58,595 bases of DNA from Obrimoposthia wandeli (taxonomy: Eukaryota). The translations under genes were made by a program, and so were the position numbers. Where the stretch lies: assembly GCA_977020255.1 (NCBI GenBank), contig CDROCS010005983.1, positions 1-58,595 on the forward strand, written 5' to 3'. Each line of letters opens with the position of its first letter. Position 1 is the first letter of the stretch. The notes beneath the pieces are model-generated. The model saw only the letters and a program-made list of their open reading frames with translations, made no database searches and was not told the origin of the DNA. Positions 5,846 to 54,493 of this stretch are shown here, piece after piece.

Positions 5846-6160
5846 TTCGAGAAATTCAACCAAGCGCAGGTAAACGGCGAGAGTAACTACGACTTTCTGA
5901 GGGAGACAAAAACAGGAATCTATGAGATTCTTCGAGAGGACCATAATATAAGTAAAAATACAGAGGATATTTTACTTAGAATAATTAATATTATAAATAT
6001 TAATTCTGACCAATGTAATTTGGATAAAAACAATTTAAATCAAAAAGTAATTAATAGAAAACACTTGAGTCCTGTTTTGAATTATAAAATTCGAAAGATA
6101 AAATCCTTTTTTATATGCCATTTCAACATTACCGATTCAGCACTCTTGGAGTGTCTTTAA
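5846..6160 (+). pseudogene. Start-less 104-codon stop-free frame resembling the TFIIA-gamma N-terminal helical half; overlaps the start of the intact gene in another frame (present in every unit, e.g. 13779-14093)
   Basis: Translation: FEKFNQAQVNGESNYDFLRETKTGIYEILREDHNISKNTEDILLRIINIININSDQCNLDKNNLNQKVINRKHL... The spacing Y-x3-R-x-T-x2-G matches YQLYRNTTLG. ISKNTEDILLR resembles ITPQLALQVLLQ, and LDKNNLNQKVINR resembles FDKSINNALNQRVKAR. Hand alignment only. Confidence 0.4.
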
Positions 6161-6899
6161 GTAGTGCACTAGAAGAATTTGCTGAAATGTACAAATTACC
6201 GAGAACTTTTACTCAACAAGTAATCTTTATTGTATATTGTCATTCAATAGAAATTTTAGGTTTATAATGAGTTTGACGATATTATAAATGACAAACTTGA
6301 GAAAAATGTCACAGATAAGATGACATTTAACGGTGATATGAGAGCGTACAGGTTTTGTGACAGTGTTTGGACATTCATTATGGAAAATTTGATCGTAATA
6401 CAAAATGGAAAAAAGAAACTTTATCCGAAGGTTAGTTAATAAAAAAAATTACCAAGTATTTTGTTTAGATTTTTTTAACTTATAGCATTGAGATAAAGCA
6501 TAATTTTGATAAATTGTAATGTATGCGAAGTCATTTGATTATTCGTAATGGTAAACATATATATTTAAATACACTTTTTAAAACATTCTCTTTCTTTTAA
6601 ATTAACATATAAATAGCCAAGCTGTACATTATTGCCATCATTTATAATACATATATTTTTAAAGTACCTCAAACATGTGCATATTGAGCATTTTTGTTAC
6701 AAATACCTATTCTCTTAACACCGGTTATTAAAAAACTCTTTTTTTTCACTTAGAACTTTTCATACAATCACATTTTCTCATCGATTTTTCTTGTATTCAG
6801 GTCAAAATCGTGGCTGTGGATCAACAAACAAACAGTAAGCGGAAATTGGAAGTCGATGATGAAGAAGTACAGCCACCATCTAAAAGATATCGATATTAA
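6115..6899 (+). CDS. GTF2A2-like: Divergent TFIIA small (gamma) subunit homolog, copy 1; exons 6115-6219, 6260-6430, 6801-6899; 124 aa
   Basis: Spliced translation: MPFQHYRFSTLGVSLSSALEEFAEMYKLPRTFTQQ|VYNEFDDIINDKLEKNVTDKMTFNGDMRAYRFCDSVWTFIMENLIVIQNGKKKLYPK|VKIVAVDQQTNSKRKLEVDDEEVQPPSKRYRY*. There are two phase-0 GT-AG introns (40 nt GTAATC..TTTTAG; 370 nt GTTAGT..TTCAG). It aligns without gaps to human TFIIA-gamma residues 1-99 as recalled (YR..TLG.SL, FD..IN, YRFCD.VWTF, KVKIVA.D); hand count about 37/99 identical. Confidence 0.93.
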
Positions 6900-6912
6900 A
6901 TGAATATTGAAA

Positions 6913-6934
6913 AATAAAAATGTTTTTGTTTTGC
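6913..6934 (+). terminator. Candidate polyadenylation signal of the TFIIA-gamma gene (repeated in each unit)
   Basis: AATAAA at 6913-6918, 14 nt after the stop codon, followed by GT/T-rich TGTTTTTGTTTTG. AATAAA is common by chance in AT-rich DNA. Confidence 0.45.
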
Positions 6935-7080
6935 AATATTAATTATCTATCTCTATTTTTATAACCTTGCCATTTCCCTTTTTCCCATTTCTCTCCCGGT
7001 GTTGAAATTTGAATTGGTTTTCAAATGCTATGGTGAGTTGGATCATGTAAATTCAAATAATGTGCGTCCCAGCGATTCGT

Positions 7081-7431
7081 TTAAAATATTCCAGAATTCA
7101 TCGTACAGTAATAAGGACTGAATGATGCATTTCCCTGATCTATATTTCCTGTAAATCCGACTAGAGTATATTGTCTAAAACCAGACCCATCAGTGGTAAT
7201 CCAATGTTCAGTGTCATGGTAGTGTATCATATCATCACATGTAGGAATGTTCCAAATGTTATCACGGCCTAGGACATGTCCACGATTTACACTGCATGAA
7301 GGAGAGGAAGTTGTTTGGCATGACCGCCCGTTAATCTGATAATTGTGACTAGACTCATACTTCAGTTTCGCTTCATCGTTTTGAAGGCATCTAGTTTGCA
7401 ATAACTTGAATTTCGTTAGAATAATTTGCAC
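7081..7431 (-). other. Unknown 116-codon open frame convergent with the TFIIA-gamma gene (also 15013, 23568, 30883, 38816, 46119, 54675)
   Basis: Stop-free in all 7 complete copies, with higher GC than the flanks and 5 Cys. A GTAAGT donor-like site (7435-7430) and a CTAAC branch-like motif lie at its 5' end. No recognisable family. Confidence 0.3.
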
Positions 7432-10400
7432 TTACTACACCATGATTACCGCTTCTTTCATGGTTTGGTTATTCGACTATGTTTCGAGTTGTATAGACTA
7501 AATTGTAAATATTTCTCTTTGAATATAGATTGCACAGGAATATGGTGTATAGAGTATATTGTAAAAAGAAAGTGCCTCATTATTGAAAATGCGAACAACT
7601 GTAAAGAAAAATTACCAAAATCTCATTAACTTTTATCAGAACAATCATTTAATATCCAGCCACCAGAACGACTGTAAAACATTTCTTTAGTGCCTACAAC
7701 TTATCAATATTTGGACACATTCAAATTCTCTAAATAAATCCATTTATGTACATTTTGATTTTTTAAACCAGACTCTAATTCAAGAAGGATTCCTTGCCCA
7801 CGTTCTATTCACCACGTTGTCTTCAATAAACTTTATTATACGCAGATGAATACGCGATTGACTGAAGTATTTCGGTTTTTGGTAATTTTTGCTATAAAAA
7901 CTTGTTAAAGTAAATACACCATCTTCATCTAAACTTAATTGACACAAAATATCTTATAAATATTAAAATGAGAAGATAAAAATTCTTCAAAGTCCGAAAC
8001 GTCCTACTTTTAAATAAGCCTGTATACATCCTAGATTCGACAGGATAACCCTCGTCGCGATACAAGTCTTGTCAGTCCTCAAAGACATCCGGATCCAGTT
8101 TGTACCCTCAAATCAGAACTCTGCATATTATCCTAGTCGGGAAAGATACCTGCTAGGAGAAGCCAAGGAAGACTGGGCTTATGTTTTCAGGGAGGAAACA
8201 AGACTATTCGCTGTGTACTAACAGACAAAAGTCTTCGAATGCCATTATCTCTTGTTGGCAATACGCCCCATTTATGTCTTAGTATTTTCTGTTCTCGTTG
8301 GTCACATCACTCTCTTCGCCTATCAAGCACTTATCCAGGCGTGATGGGATTGGCGAGATTTTTATATATAAGCAGCTGCGAAATATAAGTAATTACCAGT
8401 TTGCTATTGTCAATATTTATTGTAGGTTTTAGCAAAAGTTTAAATTTTTAGTAAAATATTTATATTAAAACCTAAACATTGAGTCTATTGTTTACGCCCA
8501 AGAATTTGAGAAGCCAGTATTCTTTTCAGAAGATTATATTTGGGAACTTCAGAAACTAACCCTGTTATGAAACCAAACAAAGTTAATTGAATTTTCTCCG
8601 TAGGGTTTGACAAGGAACACGGTGATAATTATTACATTGACATAAACAATATCTAAGAAACTCATTATCTATGACAGCTCATTGAATTTTTGTTCGAGTT
8701 ACTTTTGATATTAGAAAACCTCTGATTTAACAGTATCTGGGGAAATTATTATCTATGGCGCACTTTGATCTCCAGCAACAGAAAATGGACAACTGGTAAT
8801 AATAGTTTGTCATTCAGAATTCTAATTTAAAATTACTATATAAACAGTATTTCTGCATATTACGTCAAACTTCATTTAATCTTTCAGATAATTAAGATAA
8901 CAGTAACCCTGAATACTTTTAAACATCAAATTGGTTTAATTTAAATCGAACTTTAGTTTATTTTAATTATTAATTAAAATGTTCATTTCAATAAACGAAT
9001 TTTTTTTGTTGAATGAGCATTTGTTAAATTATACTGTGACTTATAATCGCTTGTCTTATTATAATAATCATCATTTTACCAGTTTTTATTTAAATACATA
9101 TTTATTAGTTTTTTAAATCCAGTGCTTTGATTTAACCCGATTATTATTATTTAATTTTTGGTAAATAGCACAACAATCAGGAATTATATTTAATGTTGTG
9201 AAATGAATTTGGCCTACTACTTACCAGGCTAGTTAAGCGATTTTGGACGAATTTGTAAAGAGGATTTAGTTTGGATTTGTCAACCATAGAGTGAATAGGA
9301 AGATGTGAAACTAAATATTCCGACGTTACAGAAAAAGACTGAAATGTCAATAGAATGCATCACTTACCCAATGTGTCGGGCTCCGATGTTTTCCCATTTC
9401 GCAACCACTACATGGGTCAGCACTGCGCGAGAGGTGTGGCATTCCGGTCGAGGCCAGACGCATCCCATCGATCGTCCTGGCATATTCGCTGAATCTCCAG
9501 CGACCCCGATAATGACAGTGGGCAGAACCATTCAATTTATGGAGGATCAAAACATCGAGGCGGACTTCGCTATATCCCCACCTGTTTTGCCGTTCCTACC
9601 TTGTTTTTTCTACCTGTTATCTTTTGACCCTACCTTCTCACCAGCTTCCTTGTAGAATACATATGTATAATAACTAAAGATAAAACTAATGATTCTGATT
9701 TTAATTCTTTTGTCTAAAATGTATTAGGAACGTGTATTAAACTTTATATACAAGATAAATAATTAATTAAACCCGGAACTCAAAATGATACAAAGTCTAT
9801 AATAAAAGCCGGATGCAAACTATGTTATTTTTAAAAAATTCAAGTCTCTAAGTTCGATCCCTACGATAAATATGTAGCCAGTAGAATTGCGCAACATCCG
9901 TCAAATTGTAAAATCATGCAATATTTGTATAAATCACATAGTTGCTGAATAATGTTACACAATATGGCAACATGCAACACCTAATTACGTGGTACAACGT
10001 AGAACTCTCTTTCAGAACAGATTGATGCTAACAAAATAATTAACTTTCCAATTTTCTGACGATTTTGAGACGTAGAAAATGATGCAGAATAGCTTACAGA
10101 TGAAGATGACTAAAATCATGTTTTCTGTAACTACAAATATAATATTATGTAATTGAACATTTCATAAACCTAATAAGAAAATAATTCTACTTTATAATCT
10201 ATAAGAATTTAATTTCAGTCTTTAAAAAACTGCGTTATATTTATATAAATAAAACTGTACCCATGTTAATTAATAAATTACAATATATTACAAGATGAGA
10301 ACTAATCTATTTGATTTCTAAATTTAACATTTATAAAATACTTATAAAACTCTAAAATATTAAGAAAATAGAAATCATTGTTTTGTTAGATTTTTTTAAT

Positions 10401-12763
10401 AATCTAATAAAATGTAACATATATAACATATAAAATATTTTCATTCAAAAACGCAGAATGTGCTGGCTACTATACATAAACGGATGTATATTTACATGGA
10501 TTCTCGCAAGGAAAAATCCTTCTATAATCAAGAAATCATATTATATTTTCAATAATATATGTAGAACTGTGACACCTAAATTCTCCAAGATTTACATAAA
10601 TTATTTCGAGAGGAAAAAAGTATCAACCGCTTAAAAAACTGATGTCAATCGAGAAAACACTTTAAACTTTTAAGTATAAGGCTCAAAAAATTTTATATAC
10701 CAATAAGAAAACAAAGAAACATACAGTTACTAAATAATGTGTATTGTCTGCAAAATTTCCGTTTACAGAATGCCAACGCCACCAGTTTGTCATTTTAAAA
10801 ACAGGTTCGTTCTTTAATTTGTTTATTTTTATTCTTTTTATGTTATTTTATCACCACTATCGCTATAATATTTATTTTTTATTTTACGTAACTCTCAATA
10901 ATTGTTGGCCCTTGGTCATTTTTTTAAAGTAATAAAATTATATTACCATTTTTTATATTTAATAAAGCCCAACAGTTACATTAAATTGTCAACACAAATT
11001 TACATTTCAAATGAAAATATATAAATAAAATTTTATAAGATTTTGCTTTAAAAATATTATTAATAAAAAATATATATTGTAATCATTTTTACATTATCTA
11101 TATTATTAGATTGAATGATTGAATTATTTGGACTTATATTTCTGATTTCGTAAGGGTTTCTGTAACATCTTTTTAAAGGTTAAGAGTAAGTTATACGTAA
11201 TTTACAACCAAATTAAAAATAAGTCGTACTTTAATGAATCAAAAATCATTTTAAAGCGTAAATTTATTTTGATTAAAAAATTATATATTAACAAAATTTA
11301 AATTATGGTTATCCTATACTACAAGAAGTACATATATATTTTGTAATACTAACATTTACACTCATTTATTAATGTTTTTCGGTTCAGGAGAAAATTAGTT
11401 GTCACAACCTACAATTGAACAACAAATCTCACTACTTGTAAGTATACCACTGAACTATCGGGACTCGTAATTTCTCCATATAAATCAACTAAGAATTTTA
11501 GAATGAGGATTGTACAATTATAATTTTTAAGTAGATTAATTTTGTTCAATACAGATCTTAACAATTTCGACAATTAATCATGATGATAAACTGATTTTTG
11601 ATCAAATAATCTAAGTAAAAATTCCACCTTTGTAGAACTGATACTTTTATAGAAACCAAAATTACTTAAATTTATATAAACCTTAGAATTTAAGTCACAC
11701 TCTTCTCATGACTTACCATATAGAGCCCTATCCCCGGGGATATGAGTCATTGATGATTCGTGTTCTTCATTCTCGGGGAATATATACCGGAAGATATCAC
11801 ATGACTAAAAAGCTATAAAAATAAGTTGTTAATAAAATATTAATATTAAAATGTAACAAATAATCTTTTCTAAATCGGCGTTCACAAATTTGTAAGGATT
11901 GAAATGAAAATTTAATAATCTAATTATTTTGAATATATGTATAAAGAAAACCATATTAATTCAATAAAAACTTTCATTTAGATATAGATTCACCTAATAT
12001 GTTACCAGTCGCCAACTCTGAACATGTAAAATGAAAATATCACCAGCGTTGAAATTTTAGGTGCATATAAAAATCTGTATGAAAGAATTTCTCATTTCTA
12101 AAATGAAACTGGACTCTCAACTAGTTGTTGTACTTGTTTCCTGTCAATGCCTGTTGTGAAGAAAATATATTAGAAAATAGCTATTAATAAATATCTAACA
12201 AATTCACTAAGAATGTATAGTGGATCTTTCTCATAAGCAGATCTGGTAATATTGAATGACGTTTAACAAAAATATCGCTTAAACCATGATATACAGCTAA
12301 CTTCAAAAAATATCACTTGCAAAGGTCTATTTTTTTTGATTAAATTATTATTAAATATAGAATTCTCAAAACTTTTGGACTCCCGTTCTTTTGTTCGTTT
12401 AATGTTAGCAGTTGAAGTGTTTTATTTGAGGGAAAATTTATTTAAATATAAATATTTAATGATCTTGATTTTTGAAACTTAAAGCTTTAAATTGAAAAAA
12501 AATCAACTTAATTATTTAAATAGGTTTTCAGTTTTTGCCTAACTTAACCTAAATGTTTTTAGGGAATTTTAGAAAATTATCGTATTTGTAGAAAGTTAAA
12601 CCAGCAAATTGCAGAATGGAAAGAGACATGTGTATGACGGGAAGACAAAACCTTGGTAATCGATAATTGGACTTATAAATAGCCGAATAAACATGCGACA
12701 TAATATGAGCAGAATTTGAGAAGAAAGTGAAATCCAAGGCGAATTTCTGGTGACCCCCCTTCG

Positions 12764-13776
12764 TCATCTATATTCCCTTCAACTACTACAACACAAATTG
12801 GTGTCAGAAGGAAACCCAGTGCCACAACAACAAGCATCAACAATCCTCGCTCCAACAGCCAACAATATACTGTCTCAACATCAACGCCTCCTACTGTCGC
12901 CAAACAACAATTCAACGCCTCTCAACAAATCTCAATTTCATTATAACACTTATATTGCTTATATTTGCATAATTGTATTTTTGTTGTTGTATTTTTATAT
13001 GTCTAAATTATTCAATTTTAGCATAAAAAAGATTTAGACTAACAATAAAAGTTAGTTTACAACAACTGAAATAAATTCAAAACATATGACTAATCTATTT
13101 TGAATATTTTGAATATTTATTTTTGACCTATTTCACTTAAAGTAATTAATATTTTGAATATTTTGAATATTTATTTTTGACCTATTTCACTTAAAGTAAT
13201 TAAAGTGAAACCATTTTTATTTGTTATAAATAAAGTGTCTCTGTTGTGACCCCTAAGCAACCCCGGTGGTCTTATTATGGTTGTGAAATTATTTTATAAG
13301 TAAAAATTGTTAATTTATCGGTTATAAATAAATCGTTATTTGATTATTACTCTTTTAATCCCGGGTCTCCTACAATTTTCTCTTCTCATCTATATTCCCT
13401 TCAACTACTACAACACAAATTGGTGTCAGAAGGAAACCCAGTGCCACAACAACAAGCATCAACAATCCTCGCTCCAACAGCCAACAATATACTGTCTCAA
13501 CATCAACGCCTCCTACTGTCGCCAAACAACAATTCAACGCCTCTCAACAAATCTCAATTTCATTATAACACTTATATTGCTTATATTTGCATAATTGTAT
13601 TTTTGTTGTTGTATTTTTATATGTCTAAATTATTCAATTTTAGCATAAAAAAGATTTAGACTAACAACAAAAGTTAGTTTACAACAACTGAAATAAATTC
13701 AAAACATATGACTAATCTATTTTGAATATTTTGAATATTTATTTTTGACCTATTTCACTTAAAGTAATTAATATTT
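12764..13776 (+). repeat. 622-bp module, 2 core copies (unit 2)
   Basis: The core TCATCTATATTCCC...TAATATTT (~390 bp) occurs at 12764 and 13386, separated by the rest of a 54-bp duplication and a 182-bp spacer. Confidence 0.95.
13096..13203 (+). repeat. Perfect 54-bp tandem duplication at each module junction
   Basis: TATTTTGAATATTTTGAATATTTATTTTTGACCTATTTCACTTAAAGTAATTAA occurs twice (13096-13149, 13150-13203) and itself contains TATTTTGAA x2. Confidence 0.9.
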
Positions 13777-14047
13777 AATTCGAGAAATTCAACCAAGCGC
13801 AGGTAAACGGCGAGAGTAACTACGACTTTCTGAGGGAGACAAAAACAGGAATCTATGAGATTCTTCGAGAGGACCATAATATAAGTAAAAATACAGAGGA
13901 TATTTTACTTAGAATAATTAATATTATAAATATTAATTCTGACCAATGTAATTTGGATAAAAACAATTTAAATCAAAAAGTAATTAATAGAAAACACTTG
14001 AGTCCTGTTTTGAATTATAAAATTCGAAAGATAAAATCCTTTTTTAT

Positions 14048-14831
14048 ATGCCATTTCAACATTACCGATTCAGCACTCTTGGAGTGTCTTTAAGTAGTGC
14101 ACTAGAAGAATTTGCTGAAATGTACAAATTACCGAGAACTTTTACTCAACAAGTAATCTTTATTGTATATTGTCATTCAATAGAAATTTTAGGTTTATAA
14201 TGAGTTTGACGATATTATAAATGACAAACTTGAGAAAAATGTCACAGATAAGATGACATTTAACGGTGATATGAGAGCGTACAGGTTTTGTGACAGTGTT
14301 TGGACATTCATTATGGAAAATTTGATCGTAATACAAAATGGAAAAAAGAAACTTTATCCGAAGGTTAGTTAATAAAAAAAATTACCAAGTATTTTGTTTA
14401 GATTTTTTTAACTTATAGCATTGAGATAAAGCATAATTTTGATAAATTGTAATGTATGCGAAGTCATTTGATTATTCGTAATGGTAAACATATATATTTA
14501 AATACACTTTTTAAAACATTCTCTTTCTTTTAAATTAACATATAAATAGCCAAGCTGTACATTATTGCCATCATTTATAATACATATATTTTTAAAGTAC
14601 CTCAAACATGTGCATATTGAGCATTTTTGTTACAAATACCTATTCTCTTAACACCGGTTATTAAAAAACTCTTTTTTGCACTTAGAACTTTTCATACAAT
14701 CACATTTTCTCATCGATTTTTCTTGTATTCAGGTCAAAATCGTGGCTGTGGATCAACAAACAAACAGTAAGCGGAAATTGGAAGTCGATGATGAAGAAGT
14801 ACAGCCACCATCTAAAAGATATCGATATTAA
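14048..14831 (+). CDS. GTF2A2-like: TFIIA-gamma homolog copy 2; exons 14048-14152, 14193-14363, 14733-14831
   Basis: Exons appear identical to copy 1 and splice sites are intact. Confidence 0.92.
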
Positions 14832-17800
14832 ATGAATATTGAAAAATAAAAATGTTTTTGTTTTGCAATATTAATTATCTATCTCTATTTTTATAACCTT
14901 GCCATTTCCCTTTTTCCCATTTCTCTCCCGGTGTTGAAATTTGAATTGGTTTTCAAATGCTATGGTGAGTTGGATCATGTAAATTCAAATAATGTGCGTC
15001 CCAGCGATTCGTTTAAAATATTCCAGAATTCATCGTACAGTAATAAGGACTGAATGATGCATTTCCCTGATCTATATTTCCTGTAAATCCGACTAGAGTA
15101 TATTGTCTAAAACCAGACCCATCAGTGGTAATCCAATGTTCAGTGTCATGGTAGTGTATCATATCATCACATGTAGGAATGTTCCAAATGTTATCACGGC
15201 CTAGGACATGTCCACGATTTACACTGCATGAAGGAGAGGAAGTTGTTTGGCATGACCGCCCGTTAATCTGATAATTGTGACTAGACTCATACTTCAGTTT
15301 CGCTTCATCGTTTTGAAGGCATCTAGTTTGCAATAACTTGAATTTCGTTAGAATAATTTGCACTTACTACACCATGATTACCGCTTCTTTCATGGTTTGG
15401 TTATTCGACTATGTTTCGAGTTGTATAGACTAAATTGTAAATATTTCTCTTTGAATATAGATTGCACAGGAATATGGTGTATAGAGTATATTGTAAAAAG
15501 AAAGTGCCTCATTATTGAAAATGCGAACAACTGTAAAGAAAAATTACCAAAATCTCATTAACTTTTATCAGAACAATCATTTAATATCCAGCCATCAGAA
15601 CGACTGTAAAACATTTCTTTAGTGCCTACAACTTATCAATATTTGGACACATTCAAATTCTCTAAATAAATCCATTTATGTACATTTTGATTTTTTTAAA
15701 CCAGACTCTAATTCAAGAAGGATTCCTTGCCCACGTTCTATTCACCACGTTGTCTTCAATAAACTTTATTATACGCAGATGAATACGCGATTGACTGAAG
15801 TATTTCGGTTTTTGGTAATTTTTGCTATAAAAACTTGTTAAAGTAAATACACCATCTTCATCTAAACTTAATTGACACAAAATATCTTATAAATATTAAA
15901 ATGAGAAGATAAAAATTCTTCAAAGTCCGAAACGTCCTACTTTTAAATAAGCCTGTATACATCCTAGATTCGACAGGGGTACCCTCGTCGCGATACAAGT
16001 CTTGTCAGTCCTCAAAGACATCCGGATCCAGTTTGTACCCTCAAATCAGAACTCTGCATATTATCCTAGTCGGGAAAGATACCTGCTAGGAGAAGCCAAG
16101 GAAGACTGGGCTTATGTTTTCAGGGAGGAAACAAGACTATTCGCTGTGTACTAACAGACAAAAGTCTTCGAATGCCATTATCTCTTGTTGGCAATACGCC
16201 CCATTTATGTCTTAGTATTTTCTGTTCTCGTTGGTCACATCACTCTCTTCGCCTATCAAGCACTTATCCAGGCGTGATGGGATTGGCGAGATTTTTATAT
16301 ATAAGCAGCTGCGAAATATAAGTAATTACCAGTTTGCTATTGTCAATATTTATTGTAGGTTTTAGCAAAAGTTTAAATTTTTAGTAAAATATTTATATTA
16401 AAACCTAAACATTGAGTCTATTGTTTACGCCCAAGAATTTGAGAAGCCAGTATTCTTTTCAGAAGATTATATTTGGGAACTTCAGAAACTAACCCTGTTA
16501 TGAAACCAAACAAAGTTAATTGAATTTTCTCCGTAGGGTTTGACAAGGAACACGGTGATAATTATTACATTGACATAAACAATATCTAAGAAACTCATTA
16601 TCTATGACAGCTCATTGAATTTTTGTTCGAGTTACTTTTGATATTAGAAAACCTCTGATTTAACAGTATCTGGGGAAATTATTATCTATGGCGCACTTTG
16701 ATCTCCAGCAACAGAAAATGGACAACTGGTAATAATAGTTTGTCATTCAGAATTCTAATTTAAAATTACTATATAAACAGTATTTCTGCATATTACGTCA
16801 AACTTCATTTAATCTTTCAGATAATTAAGATAACAGTAACCCTGAATACTTTTAAACATCAAATTGGTTTAATTTAAATCGAACTTTAGTTTATTTTAAT
16901 TATTAATTAAAATGTTCATTTCAATAAACGAATTTTTTTTTGTTGAATGAGCATTTGTTAAATTATACTGTGACTTATAATCGCTTGTCTTATTATAATA
17001 ATCATCATTTTACCAGTTTTTATTTAAATACATCTTTATTAGTTTTTTAAATCCAGTGCTTTGATTTAACCCGATTATTATTATTTAATTTTTGGTAAAT
17101 AGCACAACAATCAGGAATTATATTTAATGTTGTGAAATGAATTTGGCCTACTACTTACCAGGCTAGTTAAGCGATTTTGGACGAATTTGTAAAGAGGATT
17201 TAGTTTGGATTTGTCAACCATAGAGTGAATAGGAAGATGTGAAACTAAATATTCCGACGTTACAGAAAAAGACTGAAATGTCAATAGAATGCATCACTTA
17301 CCCAATGTGTCGGGCTCCGATGTTTTCCCATTTCGCAACCACTACATGGGTCAGCACTGCGCGAGAGGTGTGGCATTCCGGTCGAGGCCAGACGCATCCC
17401 ATCGATCGTCCTGGCATATTCGCTGAATCTCCAGCGACCCCGATAATGACAGTGGGCAGAACCATTCAATTTATGGAGGATCAAAACATCGAGGCGGACT
17501 TCGCTATATCCCCACCTGTTTTGCCGTTCCTACCTTGTTTTTTCTACCTGTTATCTTTTGACCCTACCTTCTCACCAGCTTCCTTGTAGAATACATATGT
17601 ATAATAACTAAAGATAAAACTAATGATTCTGATTTTAATTCTTTTGTCTAAAATGTATTAGGAACGTGTATTAAACTTTATATACAAGATAAATAATTAA
17701 TTAAACCCGGAACTCAAAATGATACAAAGTCTATAATAAAAGCCGGATGCAAACTATGTTATTTTTAAAAAATTCAAGTCTCTAAGTTCGATCCCTACGA

Positions 17801-37850: not shown

Positions 37851-38634
37851 ATGCCATTTCAACATTACCGATTCAGCACTCTTGGAGTGTCTTTAAGTAG
37901 TGCACTAGAAGAATTTGCTGAAATGTACAAATTACCGAGAACTTTTACTCAACAAGTAATCTTTATTGTATATTGTCATTCAATAGAAATTTTAGGTTTA
38001 TAATGAGTTTGACGATATTATAAATGACAAACTTGAGAAAAATGTCACAGATAAGATGACATTTAACGGTGATATGAGAGCGTACAGGTTTTGTGACAGT
38101 GTTTGGACATTCATTATGGAAAATTTGATCGTAATACAAAATGGAAAAAAGAAACTTTATCCGAAGGTTAGTTAATAAAAAAATTACCAAGTATTTTGTT
38201 TAGATTTTTTTAACTTATAGCATTGAGATAAAGCATAATTTTGATAAATTGTAATGTATGCGAAGTCATTTGATTATTCGTAATGGTAAACATATATATT
38301 TAAATACACTTTTTAAAACATTCTCTTTCTTTTAAATTAACATATAAATAGCCAAGCTGTACATTATTGCCATCATTTATAATACATATATTTTTAAAGT
38401 ACCTCAAACATGTGCATATTGAGCATTTTTGTTACAAATACCTATTCTCTTAACACCGGTTATTAAAAAACTCTTTTTTTTCACTTAGAACTTTTCATAC
38501 AATCACATTTTCTCATCGATTTTTCTTGTATTCAGGTCAAAATCGTGGCTGTGGATCAACAAACAAACAGTAAGCGGAAATTGGAAGTCGATGATGAAGA
38601 AGTACAGCCACCATCTAAAAGATATCGATATTAA
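37851..38634 (+). CDS. GTF2A2-like: TFIIA-gamma homolog copy 5; exons 37851-37955, 37996-38166, 38536-38634
   Basis: Exons appear identical to copy 1 and splice sites are intact. Confidence 0.92.
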
Positions 38635-44600: not shown

Positions 44601-45152
44601 GTCTCAACATCAACGCCTCCTACTGTCGCCAAACAACAATTCAACGCCTCTCAACAAATCTCAATTTCATTATAACACTTATATTGCTTATATTTGCATA
44701 ATTGTATTTTTGTTGTTGTTTTTATATGTCTAAATTATTCAATTTTAGCATAAAAAAGATTTAGACTAACAACAAAAGTTAGTTTACAACAACTGAAATA
44801 AATTCAAAACATATGACTAATCTATTTTGAATATTTTGAATATTTATTTTTGACCTATTTCACTTAAAGTAATTAATATTTAATTCGAGAAATTCAACCA
44901 AGCGCAGGTAAACGGCGAGAGTAACTACGACTTTCTGAGGGAGACAAAAACAGGAATCTATGAGATTCTTCGAGAGGACCATAATATAAGTAAAAATACA
45001 GAGGATATTTTACTTAGAATAATTAATATTATAAATATTAATTCTGACCAATGTAATTTGGATAAAAACAATTTAAATCAAAAAGTAATTAATAGAAAAC
45101 ACTTGAGTCCTGTTTTGAATTATAAAATTCGAAAGATAAAATCCTTTTTTAT

Positions 45153-45938
45153 ATGCCATTTCAACATTACCGATTCAGCACTCTTGGAGTGTCTTTAAGT
45201 AGTGCACTAGAAGAATTTGCTGAAATGTACAAATTACCGAGAACTTTTACTCAACAAGTAATCTTTATTGTATATTGTCATTCAATAGAAATTTTAGGTT
45301 TATAATGAGTTTGACGATATTATAAATGACAAACTTGAGAAAAATGTCACAGATAAGATGACATTTAACGGTGATATGAGAGCGTACAGGTTTTGTGACA
45401 GTGTTTGGACATTCATTATGGAAAATTTGATCGTAATACAAAATGGAAAAAAGAAACTTTATCCGAAGGTTAGTTAATAAAAAAAATTACCTAGTATTTT
45501 GTTTAGATTTTTTTAACTTATAGCATTGAGATAAAGCATAATTTTGGTAAATTGTAATGTATGCGAAGTCATTTGATTATTCGTAATGGTAAACATATAT
45601 ATTTAAATACACTTTTTAAAACATTCTCTTTCTTTTAAATTAACATATAAATAGCCAAGCTGTACATTATTGCCATCATTTATAATACATATATTTTTAA
45701 AGTACCTCAAACATGTGCATATTGAGCATTTTTGTTACAAATACCTATTCTCTTAACACCGGTTATTAAAAAACTCTTTTTTTTTCACTTAGAACTTTTC
45801 ATACAATCACATTTTCTCATCGATTTTTCTTGTATTCAGGTCAAAATCGTGGCTGTGGATCAACAAACAAATAGTAAGCGGAAATTGGAAGTCGATGATG
45901 AAGAAGTACAGCCACCATCTAAAAGATATCGATATTAA
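45153..45938 (+). CDS. GTF2A2-like: TFIIA-gamma homolog copy 6; exons 45153-45257, 45298-45468, 45840-45938
   Basis: Same protein, with one synonymous change (AAC>AAT, Asn) at 45872 in exon 3. Confidence 0.92.
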
Positions 45939-48900
45939 ATGAATATTGAAAAATAAAAATGTTTTTGTTTTGCAATATTAATTATCTATCTCTATTTTTA
46001 TAACCTTGCCATTTCCCTTTTCCCATTTCTCTCCCGGTGTTGAAATTTGAATTGGTTTTCAAATGCTATGGTGAGTTGGATCATGTAAATTCAAATAATG
46101 TGCGTCCCAGCGATTCGTTTAAAATATTCCAGAATTCATCGTACAGTAATAAGGACTGAATGATGCATTTCCCTGATCTATATTTCCTGTAAATCCGACT
46201 AGAGTATATTGTCTAAAACCAGACCCATCAGTGGTAATCCAATGTTCAGTGTCATGGTAGTGTATCATATCATCACATGTAGGAATGTTCCAAATGTTAT
46301 CACGGCCTAGGACATGTCCACGATTTACACTGCATGAAGGAGAGGAAGTTGTTTGGCATGACCGCCCGTTAATCTGATAATTGTGACTAGACTCATACTT
46401 CAGTTTCGCTTCATCGTTTTGAAGGCATCTAGTTTGCAATAACTTGAATTTCGTTAGAATAATTTGCACTTACTACACCATGATTACCACTTCTTTCATG
46501 GTTTGGTTATTCGACTATGTTTCGAGTTGTATAGACTAAATTGTAAATATTTCTCTTTGAATATAGATTGCACAGGAATATGGTGTATAGAGTATATTGT
46601 AAAAAAGAAAGTGCCTCATTATTGAAAATGCGAACAACTGTAAAGAAAAATTACCAAAATCTCATTAACTTTTATCAGAACAATCATTTAATATCCAGCC
46701 ATCAGAACGACTGTAAAACATTTCTTTAGTGCCTACAACTTATCAATATTTGGACACATTCAAATTCTCTAAATAAATCCATTTATGTACATTTTGATTT
46801 TTTTAAACCAGACTCTAATTCAAGAAGGATTCCTTGCCCACGTTCTATTCACCACGTTGTCTTCAATAAACTTTATTATACGCAGATGAATACGCGATTG
46901 ACTGAAGTATTTCGGTTTTTGGTAATTTTTGCTATAAAAACTTGTTAAAGTAAATACACCATCTTCATCTAAACTTAATTGACACAAAATATCTTATAAA
47001 TATTAAAATGAGAAGATAAAAATTCTTCAAAGTCCGAAACGTCCTACTTTTAAATAAGCCTGTATACATCCTAGATTCGACAGGGTACCCTCGTCGCGAT
47101 ACAAGTCTTGTCAGTCCTCAAAGACATCCGGATCCAGTTTGTACCCTCAAATCAGAACTCTGCATATTATCCTAGTCGGGAAAGATACCTGCTAGGAGAA
47201 GCCAAGGAAGACTGGGCTTATGTTTTCAGGGAGGAAACAAGACTATTCGCTGTGTACTAACAGACAAAAGTCTTCGAATGCCATTATCTCTTGTTGGCAA
47301 TACGCCCCATTTATGTCTTAGTATTTTCTGTTCTCGTTGGTCACATCACTCTCTTCGCCTATCAAGCACTTATCCAGGCGTGATGGGATTGGCGAGATTT
47401 TTATATATAAGCAGCTGCGAAATATAAGTAATTACCAGTTTGCTATTGTCAATATTTATTGTAGGTTTTAGCAAAAGTTTAAATTTTTAGTAAAATATTT
47501 ATATTAAAACCTAAACATTGAGTCTATTGTTTACGCCCAAGAATTTGAGAAGCCAGTATTCTTTTCAGAAGATTATATTTGGGAACTTCAGAAACTAACC
47601 CTGTTATGAAACCAAACAAAGTTAATTGAATTTTCTCCGTAGGGTTTGACAAGGAACACGGTGATAATTATTACATTGACATAAACAATATCTAAGAAAC
47701 TCATTATCTATGACAGCTCATTGAATTTTTGTTCGAGTTACTTTTGATATTAGAAAACCTCTGATTTAACAGTATCTGGGGAAATTATTATCTATGGCGC
47801 ACTTTGATCTCCAGCAACAGAAAATGGACAACTGGTAATAATAGTTTGTCATTCAGAATTCTAATTTAAAATTACTATATAAACAGTATTTCTGCATATT
47901 ACGTCAAACTTCATTTAATCTTTCAGATAATTAAGATAACAGTAACCCTGAATACTTTTAAACATCAAATTGGTTTAATTTAAATCGAACTTTAGTTTAT
48001 TTTAATTATTAATTAAAATGTTCATTTCAATAAACGAATTTTTTTTTGTTGAATGAGCATTTGTTAAATTATACTGTGACTTATAATCGCTTGTCTTATT
48101 ATAATAATCATCATTTTACCAGTTTTTATTTAAATACATCTTTATTAGTTTTTTAAATCCAGTGCTTTGATTTAACCCGATTATTATTATTTAATTTTTG
48201 GTAAATAGCACAACAATCAGGAATTATATTTAATGTTGTGAAATGAATTTGGCCTACTACTTACCAGGCTAGTTAAGCGATTTTGGACGAATTTGTAAAG
48301 AGGATTTAGTTTGGATTTGTCAACCATAGAGTGAATAGGAAGATGTGAAACTAAATATTCCGACGTTACAGAAAAAGACTGAAATGTCAATAGAATGCAT
48401 CACTTACCCAATGTGTCGGGCTCCGATGTTTTCCCATTTCGCAACCACTACATGGGTCAGCACTGCGCGAGAGGTGTGGCATTCCGGTCGAGGCCAGACG
48501 CATCCCATCGATCGTCCTGGCATATTCGCTGAATCTCCAGCGACCCCGATAATGACAGTGGGCAGAACCATTCAATTTATGGAGGATCAAAACATCGAGG
48601 CGGACTTCGCTATATCCCCACCTGTTTTGCCGTTCCTACCTTGTTTTTTTCTACCTGTTATCTTTTGACCCTACCTTCTCACCAGCTTCCTTGTAGAATA
48701 CATATGTATAATAACTAAAGATAAAACTAATGATTCTGATTTTAATTCTTTTGTCTAAAATGTATTAGGAACGTGTATTAAACTTTATATACAAGATAAA
48801 TAATTAATTAAACCCGGAACTCAAAATGATACAAAGTCTATAATAAAAGCCGGATGCAAACTATGTTATTTTTAAAAAATTCAAGTCTCTAAGTTCGATC

Positions 48901-51803
48901 CCTACGATAAATATGTAGCCAGTAGAATTGCGCAACATCCGTCAAATTGTAAAATCATGCAATATTTGTATAAATCACATAGTTGCTGAATAATGTTACA
49001 CAATATGGCAACATGCAACACCTAATTACGTGGTACAACGTAGAACTCTCTTTCAGAACAGATTGATGCTAACAAAATAATTAACTTTCCAATTTTCTGA
49101 CGATTTTGAGACGTAGAAAATGATGCAGAATAGCTTACAGATGAAGATGACTAAAATCATGTTTTCTGTAACTACAAATATAATATTATGTAATTGAACA
49201 TTTCATAAACCTAATAAGAAAATAATTCTACTTTATAATCTATAAGAATTTAATTTCAGTCTTTAAAAAACTGCGTTATATTTATATAAATAAAACTGTA
49301 CCCATGTTAATTAATAAATTACAATATATTACAAGATGAGAACTAATCTATTTGATTTCTAAATTTAACATTTATAAAATACTTATAAAACTCTAAAATA
49401 TTAAGAAAATAGAAATCATTGTTTTGTTAGATTTTTTTAATAATCTAATAAAATGTAACATATATAACATATAAAATATTTTCATTCAAAAACGCAGAAT
49501 GTGCTGGCTACTATACATAAACGGATGTATATTTACATGGATTCTCGCAAGGAAAAATCCTTCTATAATCAAGAAATCATATTATATTTTCAATAATATA
49601 TGTAGAACTGTGACACCTAAATTCTCCAAGATTTACATAAATTATTTCGAGAGGAAAAAAGTATCAACCGCTTAAAAACTGATGTCAATCGAGAAAACAC
49701 TTTAAACTTTTAAGTATAAGGCTCAAAAAATTTTATATACCAATAAGAAAACAAAGAAACATACAGTTACTAAATAATGTGTATTGTCTGCAAAATTTCC
49801 GTTTACAGAATGCCAACGCCACCAGTTTGTCATTTTAAAAACAGGTTCGTTCTTTAATTTGTTTATTTTTATTCTTTTTATGTTATTTTATCACCACTAT
49901 CGCTATAATATTTATTTTTTATTTTACGTAACTCTCAATAATTGTTGGCCCTTGGTCATTTTTTTAAAGTAATAAAATTATATTACCATTTTTTATATTT
50001 AATAAAGCCCAACAGTTACATTAAATTGTCAACACAAATTTACATTTCAAATGAAAATATATATATAAAATTTTATAAGATTTTGCTTTAAAAATATTAT
50101 TAATAAAAAATATATATTGTAATCATTTTTACATTATCTATATTATTAGATTGAATGATTGAATTATTTGGACTTATATTTCTGATTTCGTAAGGGTTTC
50201 TGTAACATCTTTTTAAAGGTTAAGAGTAAGTTATACGTAATTTACAACCAAATTAAAAATAAGTCGTACTTTAATGAATCAAAAATCATTTTAAAGCGTA
50301 AATTTATTTTGATTAAAAAATTATATATTAACAAAATTTAAATTATGGTTATCCTATACTACAAGAAGTACATATATATTTTGTAATACTAACATTTACA
50401 CTCATTTATTAATGTTTTTCGGTTCAGGAGAAAATTAGTTGTCACAACCTACAATTGAACAACAAATCTCACTACTTGTAAGTATACCACTGAACTATCG
50501 GGACTCGTAATTTCTCCATATAAATCAACTAAGAATTTTAGAATGAGGATTGTACAATTATAATTTTTAAGTAGATTAATTTTGTTCAATACAGATCTTA
50601 ACAATTTCGACAATTAATCATGATGATAAACTGATTTTTGATCAAATAATCTAAGTAAAAATTCCACCTTTGTAGAACTGATACTTTTATAGAAACCAAA
50701 ATTACTTAAATTTATATAAACCTTAGAATTTAAGTCACACTCTTCTCATGACTTACCATATAGAGCCCTATCCCCGGGGATATGAGTCATTGATGATTCG
50801 TGTTCTTCATTCTCGGGGAATATATACCGGAAGATATCACATGACTAAAAAGCTATAAAAATAAGTTGTTAATAAAATATTAATATTAAAATGTAACAAA
50901 TAATCTTTTCTAAATCGGCGTTCACAAATTTGTAAGGATTGAAATGAAAATTTAATAATCTAATTATTTTGAATATATGTATAAAGAAAACCATATTAAT
51001 TCAATAAAAACTTTCATTTAGATATAGATTCACCTAATATGTTACCAGTCGCCAACTCTGAACATGTAAAATGAAAATATCACCAGCGTTGAAATTTTAG
51101 GTGCATATAAAAATCTGTATGAAAGAATTTCTCATTTCTAAAATGAAACTGGACTCTCAACTAGTTGTTGTACTTGTTTCCTGTCAATGCCTGTTGTGAA
51201 GAAAATATATTAGAAAATAGCTATTAATAAATATCTAACAAATTCACTAAGAATGTATAGTGGATCTTTCTCATAAGCAGATCTGGTAATATTGAATGAC
51301 GTTTAACAAAAATATCGCTTAAACCATGATATACAGCTAACTTCAAAAAATATCACTTGCAAAGGTCTATTTTTTTGATTAAATTATTATTAAATATAGA
51401 ATTCTCAAAACTTTTGGACTCCCGTTCTTTTGTTCGTTTAATGTTAGCAGTTGAAGTGTTTTATTTGAGGGAAAATTTATTTAAATATAAATATTTAATG
51501 ATCTTGATTTTTGAAACTTAAAGCTTTAAATTGAAAAAAAAATCAACTTAATTATTTAAATAGGTTTTCAGTTTTTGCCTAACTTAACCTAAATGTTTTT
51601 AGGGAATTTTAGAAAATTATCGTATTTGTAGAAAGTTAAACCAGCAAATTGCAGAATGGAAAGAGACATGTGTATGACGGGAAGACAAAACCTTGGTAAT
51701 CGATAATTGGACTTATAAATAGCCGAATAAACATGCGACATAATATGAGCAGAATTTGAGAAGAAAGTGAAATCCAAGGCGAATTTCTGGTGACCCCCCT
51801 TCG

Positions 51804-53437
51804 TCATCTATATTCCCTTCAACTACTACAACACAAATTGGTGTCAGAAGGAAACCCAGTGCCACAACAACAAGCATCAACAATCCTCGCTCCAACAGCC
51901 AACAATATACTGTCTCAACATCAACGCCTCCTACTGTCGCCAAACAACAATTCAACGCCTCTCAACAAATCTCAATTTCATTATAACACTTATATTGCTT
52001 ATATTTGCATAATTGTATTTTTGTTGTTGTATTTTTATATGTCTAAATTATTCAATTTTAGCATAAAAAAGATTTAGACTAACAATAAAAGTTAGTTTAC
52101 AACAACTGAAATAAATTCAAAACATATGACTAATCTATTTTGAATATTTTGAATATTTATTTTTGACCTATTTCACTTAAAGTAATTAATATTTTGAATA
52201 TTTTGAATATTTATTTTTGACCTATTTCACTTAAAGTAATTAAAGTGAAACCATTTTTATTTGTTATAAATAAAGTGTCTCTGTTGTGACCCCTAAGCAA
52301 CCCCGGTGGTCTTATTATGGTTGTGAAATTATTTTATAAGTAAAAATTGTTAATTTATCGGTTATAAATAAATCGTTATTTGATTATTACTCTTTTAATC
52401 CCGGGTCTCCTACAATTTTCTCTTCTCATCTATATTCCCTTCAACTACTACAACACAAATTGGTGTCAGAAGGAAACCCAGTGCCACAACAACAAGCATC
52501 AACAATCCTCGCTCCAACAGCCAACAATATACTGTCTCAACATCAACGCCTCCTACTGTCGCCAAACAACAATTCAACGCCTCTCAACAAATCTCAATTT
52601 CATTATAACACTTATATTGCTTATATTTGCATAATTGTATTTTTGTTGTTGTATTTTTATATGTCTAAATTATTCAATTTTAGCATAAAAAAGATTTAGA
52701 CTAACAATAAAAGTTAGTTTACAACAACTGAAATAAATTCAAAACATATGACTAATCTATTTTGAATATTTTGAATATTTATTTTTGACCTATTTCACTT
52801 AAAGTAATTAATATTTTGAATATTTTGAATATTTATTTTTGACCTATTTCACTTAAAGTAATTAAAGTGAAACCATTTTTATTTGTTATAAATAAAGTGT
52901 CTCTGTTGTGACCCCTAAGCAACCCCGGTGGTCTTATTATGGTTGTGAAATTATTTTATAAGTAAAAATTGTTAATTTATCGGTTATAAATAAATCGTTA
53001 TTTGATTATTACTCTTTTAATCCCGGGTCTCCTACAATTTTCTCTTCTCATCTATATTCCCTTCAACTACTACAACACAAATTGGTGTCAGAAGGAAACC
53101 CAGTGCCACAACAACAAGCATCAACAATCCTCGCTCCAACAGCCAACAATATACTGTCTCAACATCAACGCCTCCTACTGTCGCCAAACAACAATTCAAC
53201 GCCTCTCAACAAATCTCAATTTCATTATAACACTTATATTGCTTATATTTGCATAATTGTATTTTTGTTGTTGTATTTTTATATGTCTAAATTATTCAAT
53301 TTTAGCATAAAAAGATTTAGACTAACAACAAAAGTTAGTTTACAACAACTGAAATAAATTCAAAACATATGACTAATCTATTTTGAATATTTTGAATATT
53401 TATTTTTGACCTATTTCACTTAAAGTAATTAATATTT
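51804..53437 (+). repeat. 622-bp module, 3 core copies (unit 7)
   Basis: ORF landmarks at 52380 and 53002 are 622 bp apart. Confidence 0.95.
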
Positions 53438-53707
53438 AATTCGAGAAATTCAACCAAGCGCAGGTAAACGGCGAGAGTAACTACGACTTTCTGAGGGAGA
53501 CAAAAACAGGAATCTATGAGATTCTTCGAGAGGACCATAATATAAGTAAAAATACAGAGGATATTTTACTTAGAATAATTAATATTATAAATATTAATTC
53601 TGACCAATGTAATTTGGATAAAAACAATTTAAATCAAAAAGTAATTAATAGAAAACACTTGAGTCCTGTTTTGAATTATAAAATTCGAAAGATAAAATCC
53701 TTTTTAT

Positions 53708-54493
53708 ATGCCATTTCAACATTACCGATTCAGCACTCTTGGAGTGTCTTTAAGTAGTGCACTAGAAGAATTTGCTGAAATGTACAAATTACCGAGAACT
53801 TTTACTCAACAAGTAATCTTTATTGTATATTGTCATTCAATAGAAATTTTAGGTTTATAATGAGTTTGACGATATTATAAATGACAAACTTGAGAAAAAT
53901 GTCACAGATAAGATGACATTTAACGGTGATATGAGAGCGTACAGGTTTTGTGACAGTGTTTGGACATTCATTATGGAAAATTTGATCGTAATACAAAATG
54001 GAAAAAAGAAACTTTATCCGAAGGTTAGTTAATAAAAAAAATTACCAAGTATTTTGTTTAGATTTTTTTAACTTATAGCATTGAGATAAAGCATAATTTT
54101 GATAAATTGTAATGTATGCGAAGTCATTTGATTATTCGTAATGGTAAACATATATATTTAAATACACTTTTTAAAACATTCTCTTTCTTTTAAATTAACA
54201 TATAAATAGCCAAGCTGTACATTATTGCCATCATTTATAATACATATATTTTTAAAGTACCTCAAACATGTGCATATTGAGCATTTTTGTTACAAATACC
54301 TATTCTCTTAACACCGGTTATTAAAAAACTCTTTTTTTTTCACTTAGAACTTTTCATACAATCACATTTTCTCATCGATTTTTCTTGTATTCAGGTCAAA
54401 ATCGTGGCTGTGGATCAACAAACAAACAGTAAGCGGAAATTGGAAGTCGATGATGAAGAAGTACAGCCACCATCTAAAAGATATCGATATTAA
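53708..54493 (+). CDS. GTF2A2-like: TFIIA-gamma homolog copy 7; exons 53708-53812, 53853-54023, 54395-54493
   Basis: Exons appear identical to copy 1 and splice sites are intact. Confidence 0.92.

What the first reader, a model, noticed from the sequence alone, without database searches (positions are those of the whole stretch)
6115..54493. Ampliconic tandem array of an intact, strongly diverged TFIIA-gamma paralog
Seen: at least 7 head-to-tail copies of a spliced TFIIA small-subunit gene, all with intact ORFs and splice sites, identical in protein, and embedded with transposon debris. Known: TFIIA-gamma is normally low-copy and highly conserved across animals. Specialised TFIIA paralogs drive germline programmes: vertebrate ALF/TFIIA-tau, and Drosophila Moonshiner, a TFIIA-L paralog that works with TFIIA-S and TRF2 to transcribe heterochromatic piRNA clusters. 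Drosophila also has a TfIIA-S-2 paralog. Inference: a ~37%-identical small subunit amplified like a histone or Stellate-type cluster suggests a dosage-driven, probably germline or sex-linked alternative pre-initiation complex, or a conflict/drive amplicon. I know of no described tandem array of a TFIIA small-subunit paralog, but I cannot search the literature.
Basis: partly seen in the sequence, partly recalled or inferred. Interest (0 to 1): 0.88.

Follow-up and report, generated by a model that had tools for sequence, protein, structure and literature searches.

The report
Tandem array of a divergent TFIIA-gamma gene
A whole 58.6-kb contig of this AT-rich animal-like genome is a head-to-tail repeat that carries seven intact copies of a fast-evolving extra version of a small general transcription factor (TFIIA-gamma). 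The copies are so young that their intactness proves nothing, and whether they are used could not be tested.

Summary
Observation confirmed. The window is an entire contig and is one tandem array. Units are 7.30, 7.93 or 8.55 kb and differ by 0.03-0.21% in substitutions. Seven units carry a three-exon, 124-aa gene with GT-AG introns and one identical protein. That protein passes both Pfam TFIIA-gamma domains, models as the TFIIA-gamma fold, and keeps 23 of the family's 27 most conserved residues, at only 36% identity to human.

A separate canonical TFIIA-gamma (56% to human) lies on another contig, so the array gene is a true extra paralog. An older intact paralog (P2, 80% protein identity) lies on a third contig.

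Caveats:
- The units are so alike that intact ORFs say nothing about selection. The only signal of constraint is the comparison with P2 (dN/dS 0.53; neutral simulation P about 0.03).
- A single-unit version of the locus with the same right flank exists, so the amplification is very recent, possibly polymorphic.
- No RNA data exist for this organism, so expression, germline use, sex linkage and drive are untested.

I found no described TFIIA-gamma array in the literature searched. Verdict: a real, new variant of known kinds (general-transcription-factor paralog plus ampliconic array), function unproven. This stretch also stands in the scan's index as s1-234655 (the same first-reader finding).

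The parts
1..58595 (+). Tandem array, about 7.4 units, filling the whole contig. Unit lengths between start codons are 7933, 8554, 7315, 7934, 7302 and 8555 bp.
   Evidence: Self-BLAST at 99.0-99.9%. Contig length equals window length. Unit alignment gives 0.03-0.21% substitutions.
6115..6899 (+). Gene copy 1 of the TFIIA-gamma paralog P1. Exons 6115-6219, 6260-6430 and 6801-6899; introns of 40 and 370 nt.
   Evidence: Gene model and translation. Pfam. PDB phmmer hit to human TFIIA-gamma at 1e-16. AF2 model with pLDDT 88 matches 5iy6_O at TM 0.83.
14048..14831 (+). Gene copy 2. Exons 14048-14152, 14193-14363 and 14733-14831.
22602..23386 (+). Gene copy 3. Exons 22602-22706, 22747-22917 and 23288-23386.
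29917..30701 (+). Gene copy 4. Exons 29917-30021, 30062-30232 and 30603-30701.
37851..38634 (+). Gene copy 5. Exons 37851-37955, 37996-38166 and 38536-38634.
45153..45938 (+). Gene copy 6. Exons 45153-45257, 45298-45468 and 45840-45938. It carries the one synonymous variant.
53708..54493 (+). Gene copy 7. Exons 53708-53812, 53853-54023 and 54395-54493.
6083..6089 (+). TATAAAA, 32 nt upstream of the ATG of copy 1 and repeated in each unit. A possible core promoter; a match like this is weak evidence in 30%-GC DNA.
   Evidence: Read from the sequence. Inference only.
6913..6918 (+). AATAAA, 14 nt after the stop codon of copy 1. A possible polyadenylation signal.
   Evidence: Read from the sequence. 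Inference only.
5394..5984 (.). Very high-copy repeat directly upstream of gene copy 1. Its word depth in read contigs is about 100-800 times that of the rest of the unit, depending on the run.
   Evidence: read-laying table 2
12759..14003 (.). Two copies of a 622-623-bp sub-repeat upstream of gene copy 2. Units carry 1, 2 or 3 copies, which gives the three size classes. The left edge (12759-12765) corresponds to the ends of the amplified segment as seen in the single-unit locus on C4048 and at the array end on C2345.
   Evidence: Gaps of 622 and 1244 bp in the unit alignment. Repeated 54-bp motifs. End points at unit coordinates 6760/6766.

Best explanation
Shown: this is a genuine, very young or continuously homogenised tandem amplification of a 7.3-8.6-kb segment. 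The only recognisable gene in the segment is P1, an extra TFIIA small subunit. P1 belongs to an old, fast-evolving paralog lineage, separate from the genome's canonical TFIIA-gamma. A second, older intact member of that lineage (P2) sits on another contig.

Inferred: P1 keeps the two-domain TFIIA-gamma fold and nearly all core residues. These include Tyr65 and Trp72, which I recall as important for the TBP-DNA complex. Most surface positions have changed. P1 therefore most likely still replaces the canonical small subunit in a heterodimer with a TFIIA large subunit, sitting on TBP or a TBP-like factor and forming a variant TFIIA. This genome has at least two large-subunit types that could serve as partner.

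The array multiplies template number. If the gene is transcribed, that allows a large burst of product, as in other ampliconic genes of gametogenesis or early embryos. Expression, partner choice, and whether the copy number is selected are all unproven.
For: - Array structure: three unit size classes in a non-periodic order, and more than two haplotypes across 6 variable sites in the first 1.4 kb of the units.
- Both alleles of the variable sites 6454 and 6509 appear in contigs built from the raw DNA runs.
- More units on contig C2345 run into unique flank.
- Rare rearranged junction contigs have a depth about 20-29 times lower than the unit in two runs. This is rough; the tool warns that depth is not copy number.
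- Family membership: both Pfam domains pass. There is a gapless match to human TFIIA-gamma. An AF2 model with pLDDT 88.4 matches solved gamma chains best, at TM 0.77-0.83. P1 keeps 23 of 27 top-conserved columns despite 36% overall identity.
- A canonical gene exists elsewhere with the same exon lengths (105 and 171 nt) and the same intron positions, so P1 arose by DNA-level duplication and is not a retrocopy.
- Constraint: P1 and P2 are both intact with all splice sites. dS is 0.175 and dN/dS is 0.53. A neutral simulation gives P = 0.03 for no stop codon together with 20 or fewer amino-acid changes.
- Two TFIIA large-subunit types are present.
Against: - No RNA evidence of any kind exists.
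- Within-array identity makes the intact copies uninformative.
- dN/dS of 0.53 is only weak constraint, and it rests on 30 differences.
- The C-terminal tail is not conserved between P1 and P2.
- A one-unit version of the locus exists on C4048, so high copy number may not be fixed or needed.
- Two of three copies on C2345 are frameshifted. The changes are mostly 1-bp indels near a contig end and may be consensus errors.
- The complex prediction gave no verdict.
Confidence: 0.5

Rival explanations
1. Passenger amplification. A macrosatellite-like segment expanded recently by unequal exchange at a high-copy repeat, and the P1 gene merely sits inside it. Copy number is a neutral or mildly deleterious structural polymorphism. 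At most one copy's worth of function matters.
For: - Units differ by 0.2% or less.
- The ends of the amplified segment coincide with the edge of a very high-copy 622-bp sub-repeat, whose own copy number varies from 1 to 3 per unit.
- A single-unit locus with the same right flank at 99% identity exists on C4048.
- There is no excess conservation of exons within the array.
Against: The gene is the only recognisable coding element in the unit. Gene-containing pieces of 1.4-1.8 kb have also been copied to two further loci, C3464 and C2088. Neither point excludes neutrality.
Confidence: 0.3
2. Selfish or sex-linked amplicon. The array is a conflict-driven multicopy gene family of the Stellate, Slx/Sly or TSPY type, on a sex or germline-restricted chromosome.
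For: Only by analogy: near-identical tandem copies of a fast-evolving paralog on a small unplaced contig.
Against: There are no data on sex, tissue or small RNAs. All DNA runs come from one sample. No antagonist or inverted-repeat partner array was seen among the loci found.
Confidence: 0.1
3. Dead gene family. P1 is a recently silenced pseudogene that was copied before it could decay.
For: Weak constraint (dN/dS 0.53). Frameshifted or truncated copies on C2345 and C2088. No expression data.
Against: - The paralog lineage is old: dS to the canonical gene is saturated. Yet it keeps 23 of 27 core residues, both introns with GT-AG, and open frames in P1, P2 and the C3464 and C4048 variants.
- A confident TFIIA-gamma fold is predicted.
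Confidence: 0.12
4. Assembly artefact. One or two real copies were over-expanded by the assembler.
For: The contig consists only of repeat, with no unique anchor.
Against: - Units fall in three size classes in an irregular order.
- They carry at least 5 distinct SNV haplotypes.
- Variant alleles are seen in independent read-derived contigs.
- A second contig holds 3.4 further units ending in unique flank.
Confidence: 0.04

Closest known systems
Canonical TFIIA small subunit (human GTF2A2 / yeast Toa2)
   Same: Both Pfam domains, a gapless 103-residue alignment, the predicted fold (TM 0.77-0.83 to 1NVP_D and 5IY6_O), and 23 of 27 top-conserved residues including Y65 and W72.
   Different: Only 36% identical to human and 39% to the genome's own canonical protein, which is itself 56% identical to human. 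P1 sits on a long branch (stem 1.55 against 0.6) and has a new basic C-terminal tail. It is multi-copy, while the canonical gene was found once.
Low-copy TFIIA small-subunit paralogs (Drosophila TfIIA-S-2; rice TFIIAgamma1/gamma5)
   Same: An extra small-subunit gene sits beside a canonical one. That TfIIA-S-2 is such a paralog is my own knowledge; the papers found only mention the gene. The rice paralogs are named from my own knowledge too; the TFIIA-gamma/TALE paper (PMC4993585) was only listed, not read.
   Different: Those are single genes. Here at least 10 intact copies are assembled, 7 of them in this one array.
Germline TFIIA large-subunit paralogs (vertebrate ALF/TFIIA-tau; Drosophila Moonshiner)
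   Same: The idea of a variant TFIIA for a specialised programme. This genome also has two large-subunit types.
   Different: Those are paralogs of the large subunit and are single-copy. No expression data exist here. The comparison rests on my own knowledge and on PMC5006001 for ALF/TRF2, which I listed but did not read in depth.
Ampliconic or macrosatellite gene arrays with one ORF per unit (D4Z4/DUX4, TSPY, Stellate, histone clusters)
   Same: Kilobase-scale head-to-tail units more than 99.7% alike, one intact ORF per unit, internal sub-repeat length variation, and a possible copy-number polymorphism.
   Different: The cargo is a general-transcription-factor subunit with its introns retained. 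Chromosomal location, expression and selection are unknown.

Membership tests
TFIIA small subunit (TFIIA-gamma / Toa2) | N-terminal helical domain (Pfam PF02268) above the gathering score | tested here: met
   34.1 bits against a cut-off of 33, residues 3-48. Only just over.
TFIIA small subunit (TFIIA-gamma / Toa2) | C-terminal beta-barrel domain (Pfam PF02751) above the gathering score | tested here: met
   42.8 bits against a cut-off of 27, residues 60-99.
TFIIA small subunit (TFIIA-gamma / Toa2) | Two-domain fold like solved gamma chains | tested here: met
   AF2 model with pLDDT 88.4. Top Foldseek hits are 1nvp_D, 5iy6_O and 7o4i_V, at TM(target) 0.77-0.83 and rmsd 2.2-2.5 A.
TFIIA small subunit (TFIIA-gamma / Toa2) | Family-wide conserved core residues | tested here: met
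   P1 keeps 23 of 27 columns that are at least 70% conserved in 112 library proteins. The canonical protein keeps 26 of 27 and P2 keeps 21 of 27.
TFIIA small subunit (TFIIA-gamma / Toa2) | Forms a heterodimer with the TFIIA large subunit | tested here: inconclusive
The exon pieces with the large-subunit ends scored 0.02, which is no verdict.
TFIIA small subunit (TFIIA-gamma / Toa2) | Stabilises TBP on DNA | not testable with these tools
   Needs biochemistry.
Ampliconic tandem gene array | Head-to-tail kilobase units at very high identity, each with an intact ORF | tested here: met
Ampliconic tandem gene array | Copy number real in the organism and not only in the assembly | tested here: inconclusive
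   Variant alleles are present in read-derived contigs, and rare junctions are about 20-29 times shallower than the unit. Contig depth is not a copy number and no single-copy baseline was available.
Ampliconic tandem gene array | Sex-linked or germline-restricted expression | not testable with these tools
   No RNA runs and only one DNA sample.
Germline TFIIA paralogs of the ALF/Moonshiner type | Paralog of the large subunit (Pfam PF03153) | tested here: not met
   P1 matches only the small-subunit families. The large-subunit genes lie on other contigs.
Retrocopy | Loss of the parental introns | tested here: not met
   Both introns are kept at the same positions and phases as in the canonical gene.

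The most novel reading that the evidence does not exclude
The array is a selected, dosage-amplified source of an alternative TFIIA small subunit that builds a non-canonical initiation complex. That complex would serve either a burst programme in germline or early embryo, or the conflict with this genome's transposon-borne single-repeat TBP-like genes (19,768 first-look candidates), where P1 would act as a co-opted partner or a decoy.
Probability: 0.15. Interest if true: 0.85.

Novelty: new variant of a known kind. Interest (0 to 1): 0.55.

Why it matters
General transcription factors are usually single-copy and slow-evolving. Known specialised TFIIA variants are single genes, mostly of the large subunit. 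A multi-copy, fast-evolving small subunit would be a new way to retune the core initiation machinery, if it is expressed. It would also be a tractable case for asking how variant pre-initiation complexes arise, and it sits in a genome that also holds two large-subunit types and a huge load of TBP-like genes. If it is silent or neutral, it is simply a very young macrosatellite that happens to carry a gene.

Tried and rejected
- **Expression.** Two run searches, one with P1 and one with the canonical gene as control, found only DNA runs of one sample. Expression could not be tested. The laid contigs are unspliced genomic DNA.
- **Complex prediction.** Exon pieces with the N- and C-terminal ends of the large subunit gave no verdict, score 0.02. 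This is not evidence either way.
- **Close relatives.** The word-index search found nothing. The full HMMER search of 1.84 billion representatives found nothing above 43% identity. Hit P0002, with 11 stretches, is a repetitive protein unrelated to TFIIA-gamma and a false lead.
- **Origin of the paralog.** The tree is unresolved. Rare residues shared with the canonical protein number 6, against a background mean of 4.5, which is no signal.
- **Other content of the unit.** There were no Rfam hits at E <= 0.01 and no tRNAs. No Pfam domain reached its gathering cut-off in 8 other ORFs. No atlas relatives were found for the two 116-aa ORFs.
- **'Hidden second N-terminal half' upstream (note s1-234750).** tblastn at E <= 10 found no match there beyond weak chance-level ones.
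- **TFIIB-paralog array (note s1-232347).** PF00382 gives 12 scattered hits and no array in this genome.
- **Test of whether C4048 and C2345 are alleles.** The next 10 kb of C2345 is a multi-copy transposon, 95-97% identical to copies on 13 other contigs, and uninformative.
- **Organism identity.** The best canonical hits are only 57-60% identical and the run names are coded.
Full report
**What is there**

The window equals the whole contig G000:C5983 (58,595 bp). Self-BLAST shows it is a single head-to-tail array at 99.0-99.9% identity. Distances between successive start codons are 7933, 8554, 7315, 7934, 7302 and 8555 bp. The three size classes come from 1, 2 or 3 copies of a 622-623-bp sub-repeat just upstream of the gene. 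Aligned full units differ by only 0.03-0.21% in substitutions. There are 22 variable sites in 7,292 ungapped columns.

**The gene**

Seven units carry a gene that starts at 6115, 14048, 22602, 29917, 37851, 45153 and 53708. Its exons are 105, 171 and 99 nt, and its introns are 40 and 369-371 nt. All splice sites are GT..AG. There is one 124-aa protein and one synonymous variant.

- The protein passes Pfam TFIIA_gamma_N (34.1 against 33 bits, only just) and TFIIA_gamma_C (42.8 against 27).
- It aligns without gaps to human TFIIA-gamma over 103 residues, at 37/103 identity.
- An AlphaFold2 model built on 67 sequences has mean pLDDT 88.4. Its best structural matches are solved TFIIA gamma chains (1nvp_D, 5iy6_O, 7o4i_V; TM 0.77-0.83).
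- Of the 27 alignment columns conserved in at least 70% of 112 library TFIIA-gammas, P1 keeps 23. These include Y65 and W72, which I recall as needed for the TBP-DNA complex (own knowledge).
- TATAAAA lies 32 nt before the ATG and AATAAA 14 nt after the stop. Both are weak evidence in 30%-GC DNA.

No other gene, RNA family or tRNA was recognised in the unit.

**Is it an extra paralog?**

Yes. Six-frame searches of the 1.35-Gb genome find a separate gene on C4050.
- It has the same exon 1 and exon 2 lengths (105 and 171 nt) and the same intron positions, with introns of 36 and 42 nt.
- Its protein is 56% identical to human (58/103) and 55-60% to library proteins. It keeps 26 of 27 conserved columns.
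- P1 is 39% identical to it (41/106). dS between the two is saturated.

The strong divergence therefore belongs to the paralog and not to the lineage. P1 arose by DNA duplication and not by retroposition.

**Other members of the family**

| Locus | State |
|---|---|
| C2100:937565-938070, minus strand (P2) | Older intact paralog on a 1.03-Mb contig; 118 aa; introns 35 and 114 nt; 80/106 identical to P1 |
| C2345 | 3.4 more array units ending in unique flank; one gene identical and intact; two frameshifted by 1-bp indels near the contig start, possibly consensus errors |
| C4048 | One unit with an intact gene (S9R) |
| C3464 | Gene-only piece of 1.8 kb, intact (L88V) |
| C2088 | Gene-only piece of 1.4 kb, truncated at the 5' end |

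**Is the array real?**

Several observations argue against over-expansion by the assembler:
- the irregular order of size classes;
- at least 5 SNV haplotypes across 6 variable sites in the first 1.4 kb of the units;
- both alleles of sites 6454 and 6509 in contigs built from the raw DNA runs;
- the second contig that leaves the array into unique sequence.

Rare rearranged junction contigs are about 20-29 times shallower than the unit in two runs. This hints at a few tens of copies. The tool warns that contig depth is not a copy number, and I had no single-copy baseline.

**How young is it?**

Very young. At 0.2% divergence or less, every copy would be intact whether or not the gene is used. 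Exons hold 1 of the 22 variable sites, against 1.1 expected.

On C4048 the same segment occurs once.
- It runs from unit coordinate 6760 round to 6766.
- It is interrupted by 18.6 kb and 22.9 kb of other DNA. The second interruption has a 6-bp overlap that looks like a target-site duplication.
- It is followed by the same right flank as the array end on C2345, at 99% identity over 3.4 kb.

This is either the other haplotype or a recent segmental duplicate. Either way, the amplification post-dates a one-copy state that still exists. The junction of the amplified segment coincides with the edge of the high-copy sub-repeat. That fits unequal exchange, but the mechanism is not resolved.

**Evidence for function**

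This comes only from older comparisons.
- P1 and P2 differ at 30 of 297 aligned coding nucleotides (20 amino acids). dS is 0.175, dN is 0.093 and dN/dS is 0.53.
- In 20,000 neutral simulations, no stop codon arose in 16% of runs, 20 or fewer amino-acid changes in 15%, and both together in 3%.
- Retention of the core residues and both introns adds to this. The result is modest evidence that the lineage has been under purifying selection.
- The C-terminal tails differ. P1 ends in a basic KRK...KRYRY tail that P2 lacks through indels.

**What could not be tested**

- *Expression.* No public RNA run holds P1, and none holds the canonical gene either, so the organism simply has no RNA data in the index.
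- *Sex linkage, germline restriction, small RNAs.* All DNA runs come from one sample.
- *Orthologs.* Nothing above 43% identity exists among 1.84 billion representatives. The canonical protein also has no close relative (57-60%), so the lineage is unsampled and this absence means little. The tree joins P1 and P2 (100/98) on a long stem but cannot place them.

**Context**

The genome has at least two TFIIA large-subunit types. One is on C5309, twice and 47 kb apart. A more divergent one is on C1872/C685. The genome also has an enormous number of short single-repeat TBP-domain ORFs, with 19,768 first-look candidates. That fits earlier scan notes on Polinton-borne mini-TBPs. A TFIIB-paralog array noted elsewhere in the scan was not found in this genome with PF00382.

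**Literature**

Full-text searches for TFIIA with tandem, ampliconic, paralog or expansion terms returned reviews and work on TFIIA, TBP-related factors, ALF and plant TFIIA-gamma, and papers that mention Drosophila TfIIA-S-2. None described a tandem array of a small-subunit paralog.

**Verdict**

The best reading is a real, recent tandem amplification of a coding-competent variant TFIIA small subunit that probably still forms a TFIIA-like heterodimer. A neutral passenger amplification is a serious rival. The germline, sex-linked or drive reading is possible but has no support yet.

Noticed in passing
window 5394-5984 and the same place in every unit: The block directly upstream of each gene is a very high-copy repeat. 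Its word depth in read contigs is about 100-800 times that of the rest of the unit, depending on the run. It is part of a 622-bp sub-repeat present 1-3 times per unit, so the gene's promoter region may derive from a repeat.
   Followed up: partly
window 6950-7023, against C2100 (L057): About 74 nt lying 50-125 nt downstream of the stop codon are 100% identical between P1 and the older paralog P2. The neighbouring sequence is 84-89% identical, and homology ends right after the block. This could be a conserved 3' element or a gene-conversion patch.
   Followed up: no
G000:C4048:57317-105709: A single-unit version of the locus. It is split by 18.6 kb and 22.9 kb of inserted DNA, the second with a 6-bp overlap like a target-site duplication. 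It has the same right flank as the array end on C2345. It may be the other haplotype.
   Followed up: partly
G000:C5309:55868-59187 and 102738-106022; C1872:120356-123032; C685:643769-646425: There are at least two divergent TFIIA large-subunit paralogs. The more canonical type is duplicated 47 kb apart on one contig. The second type has a locally GC-rich acidic exon. Extra N-terminal-only hits lie at C1872:29237 and C3271:50465.
   Followed up: partly
genome-wide, e.g. G000:C919:26059-26247 and C1607:14080-14268: The Pfam TBP search returned 19,768 first-look candidates. Most of the 150 scored are single-repeat matches in open frames of about 100-190 aa at roughly 50 bits. This fits earlier notes on transposon-borne mini-TBP genes.
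   Followed up: no
window 7081-7431 (-) and 9305-9655 (+): Two 116-aa ORFs per unit, unexpectedly long for 30%-GC DNA. Neither has a convincing Pfam match (nothing over the gathering cut-off) or an atlas relative. The first is also included in the gene-containing pieces copied to C3464 and C2088.
   Followed up: partly
G000:C3464:5551-6834 against C2100:936138-937421; C2088:58929-61301 against C2100:940063-942413: The dispersed gene pieces on C3464 and C2088 sit near sequence that also flanks the older paralog on C2100, at 87-99% identity. These are shared transposons or remnants of a larger duplicated block.
   Followed up: no
L001 1396-1431; window 6220-6259: Introns in this genome are very short: 35-42 nt in the three TFIIA-gamma genes and about 46 nt in TFIIA-L. 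One has a yeast-like TACTAAC branch site. Intron 2 of P1 is 370 nt against 114 nt in P2 and 42 nt in the canonical gene; only short patches of it align to P2's.
   Followed up: no
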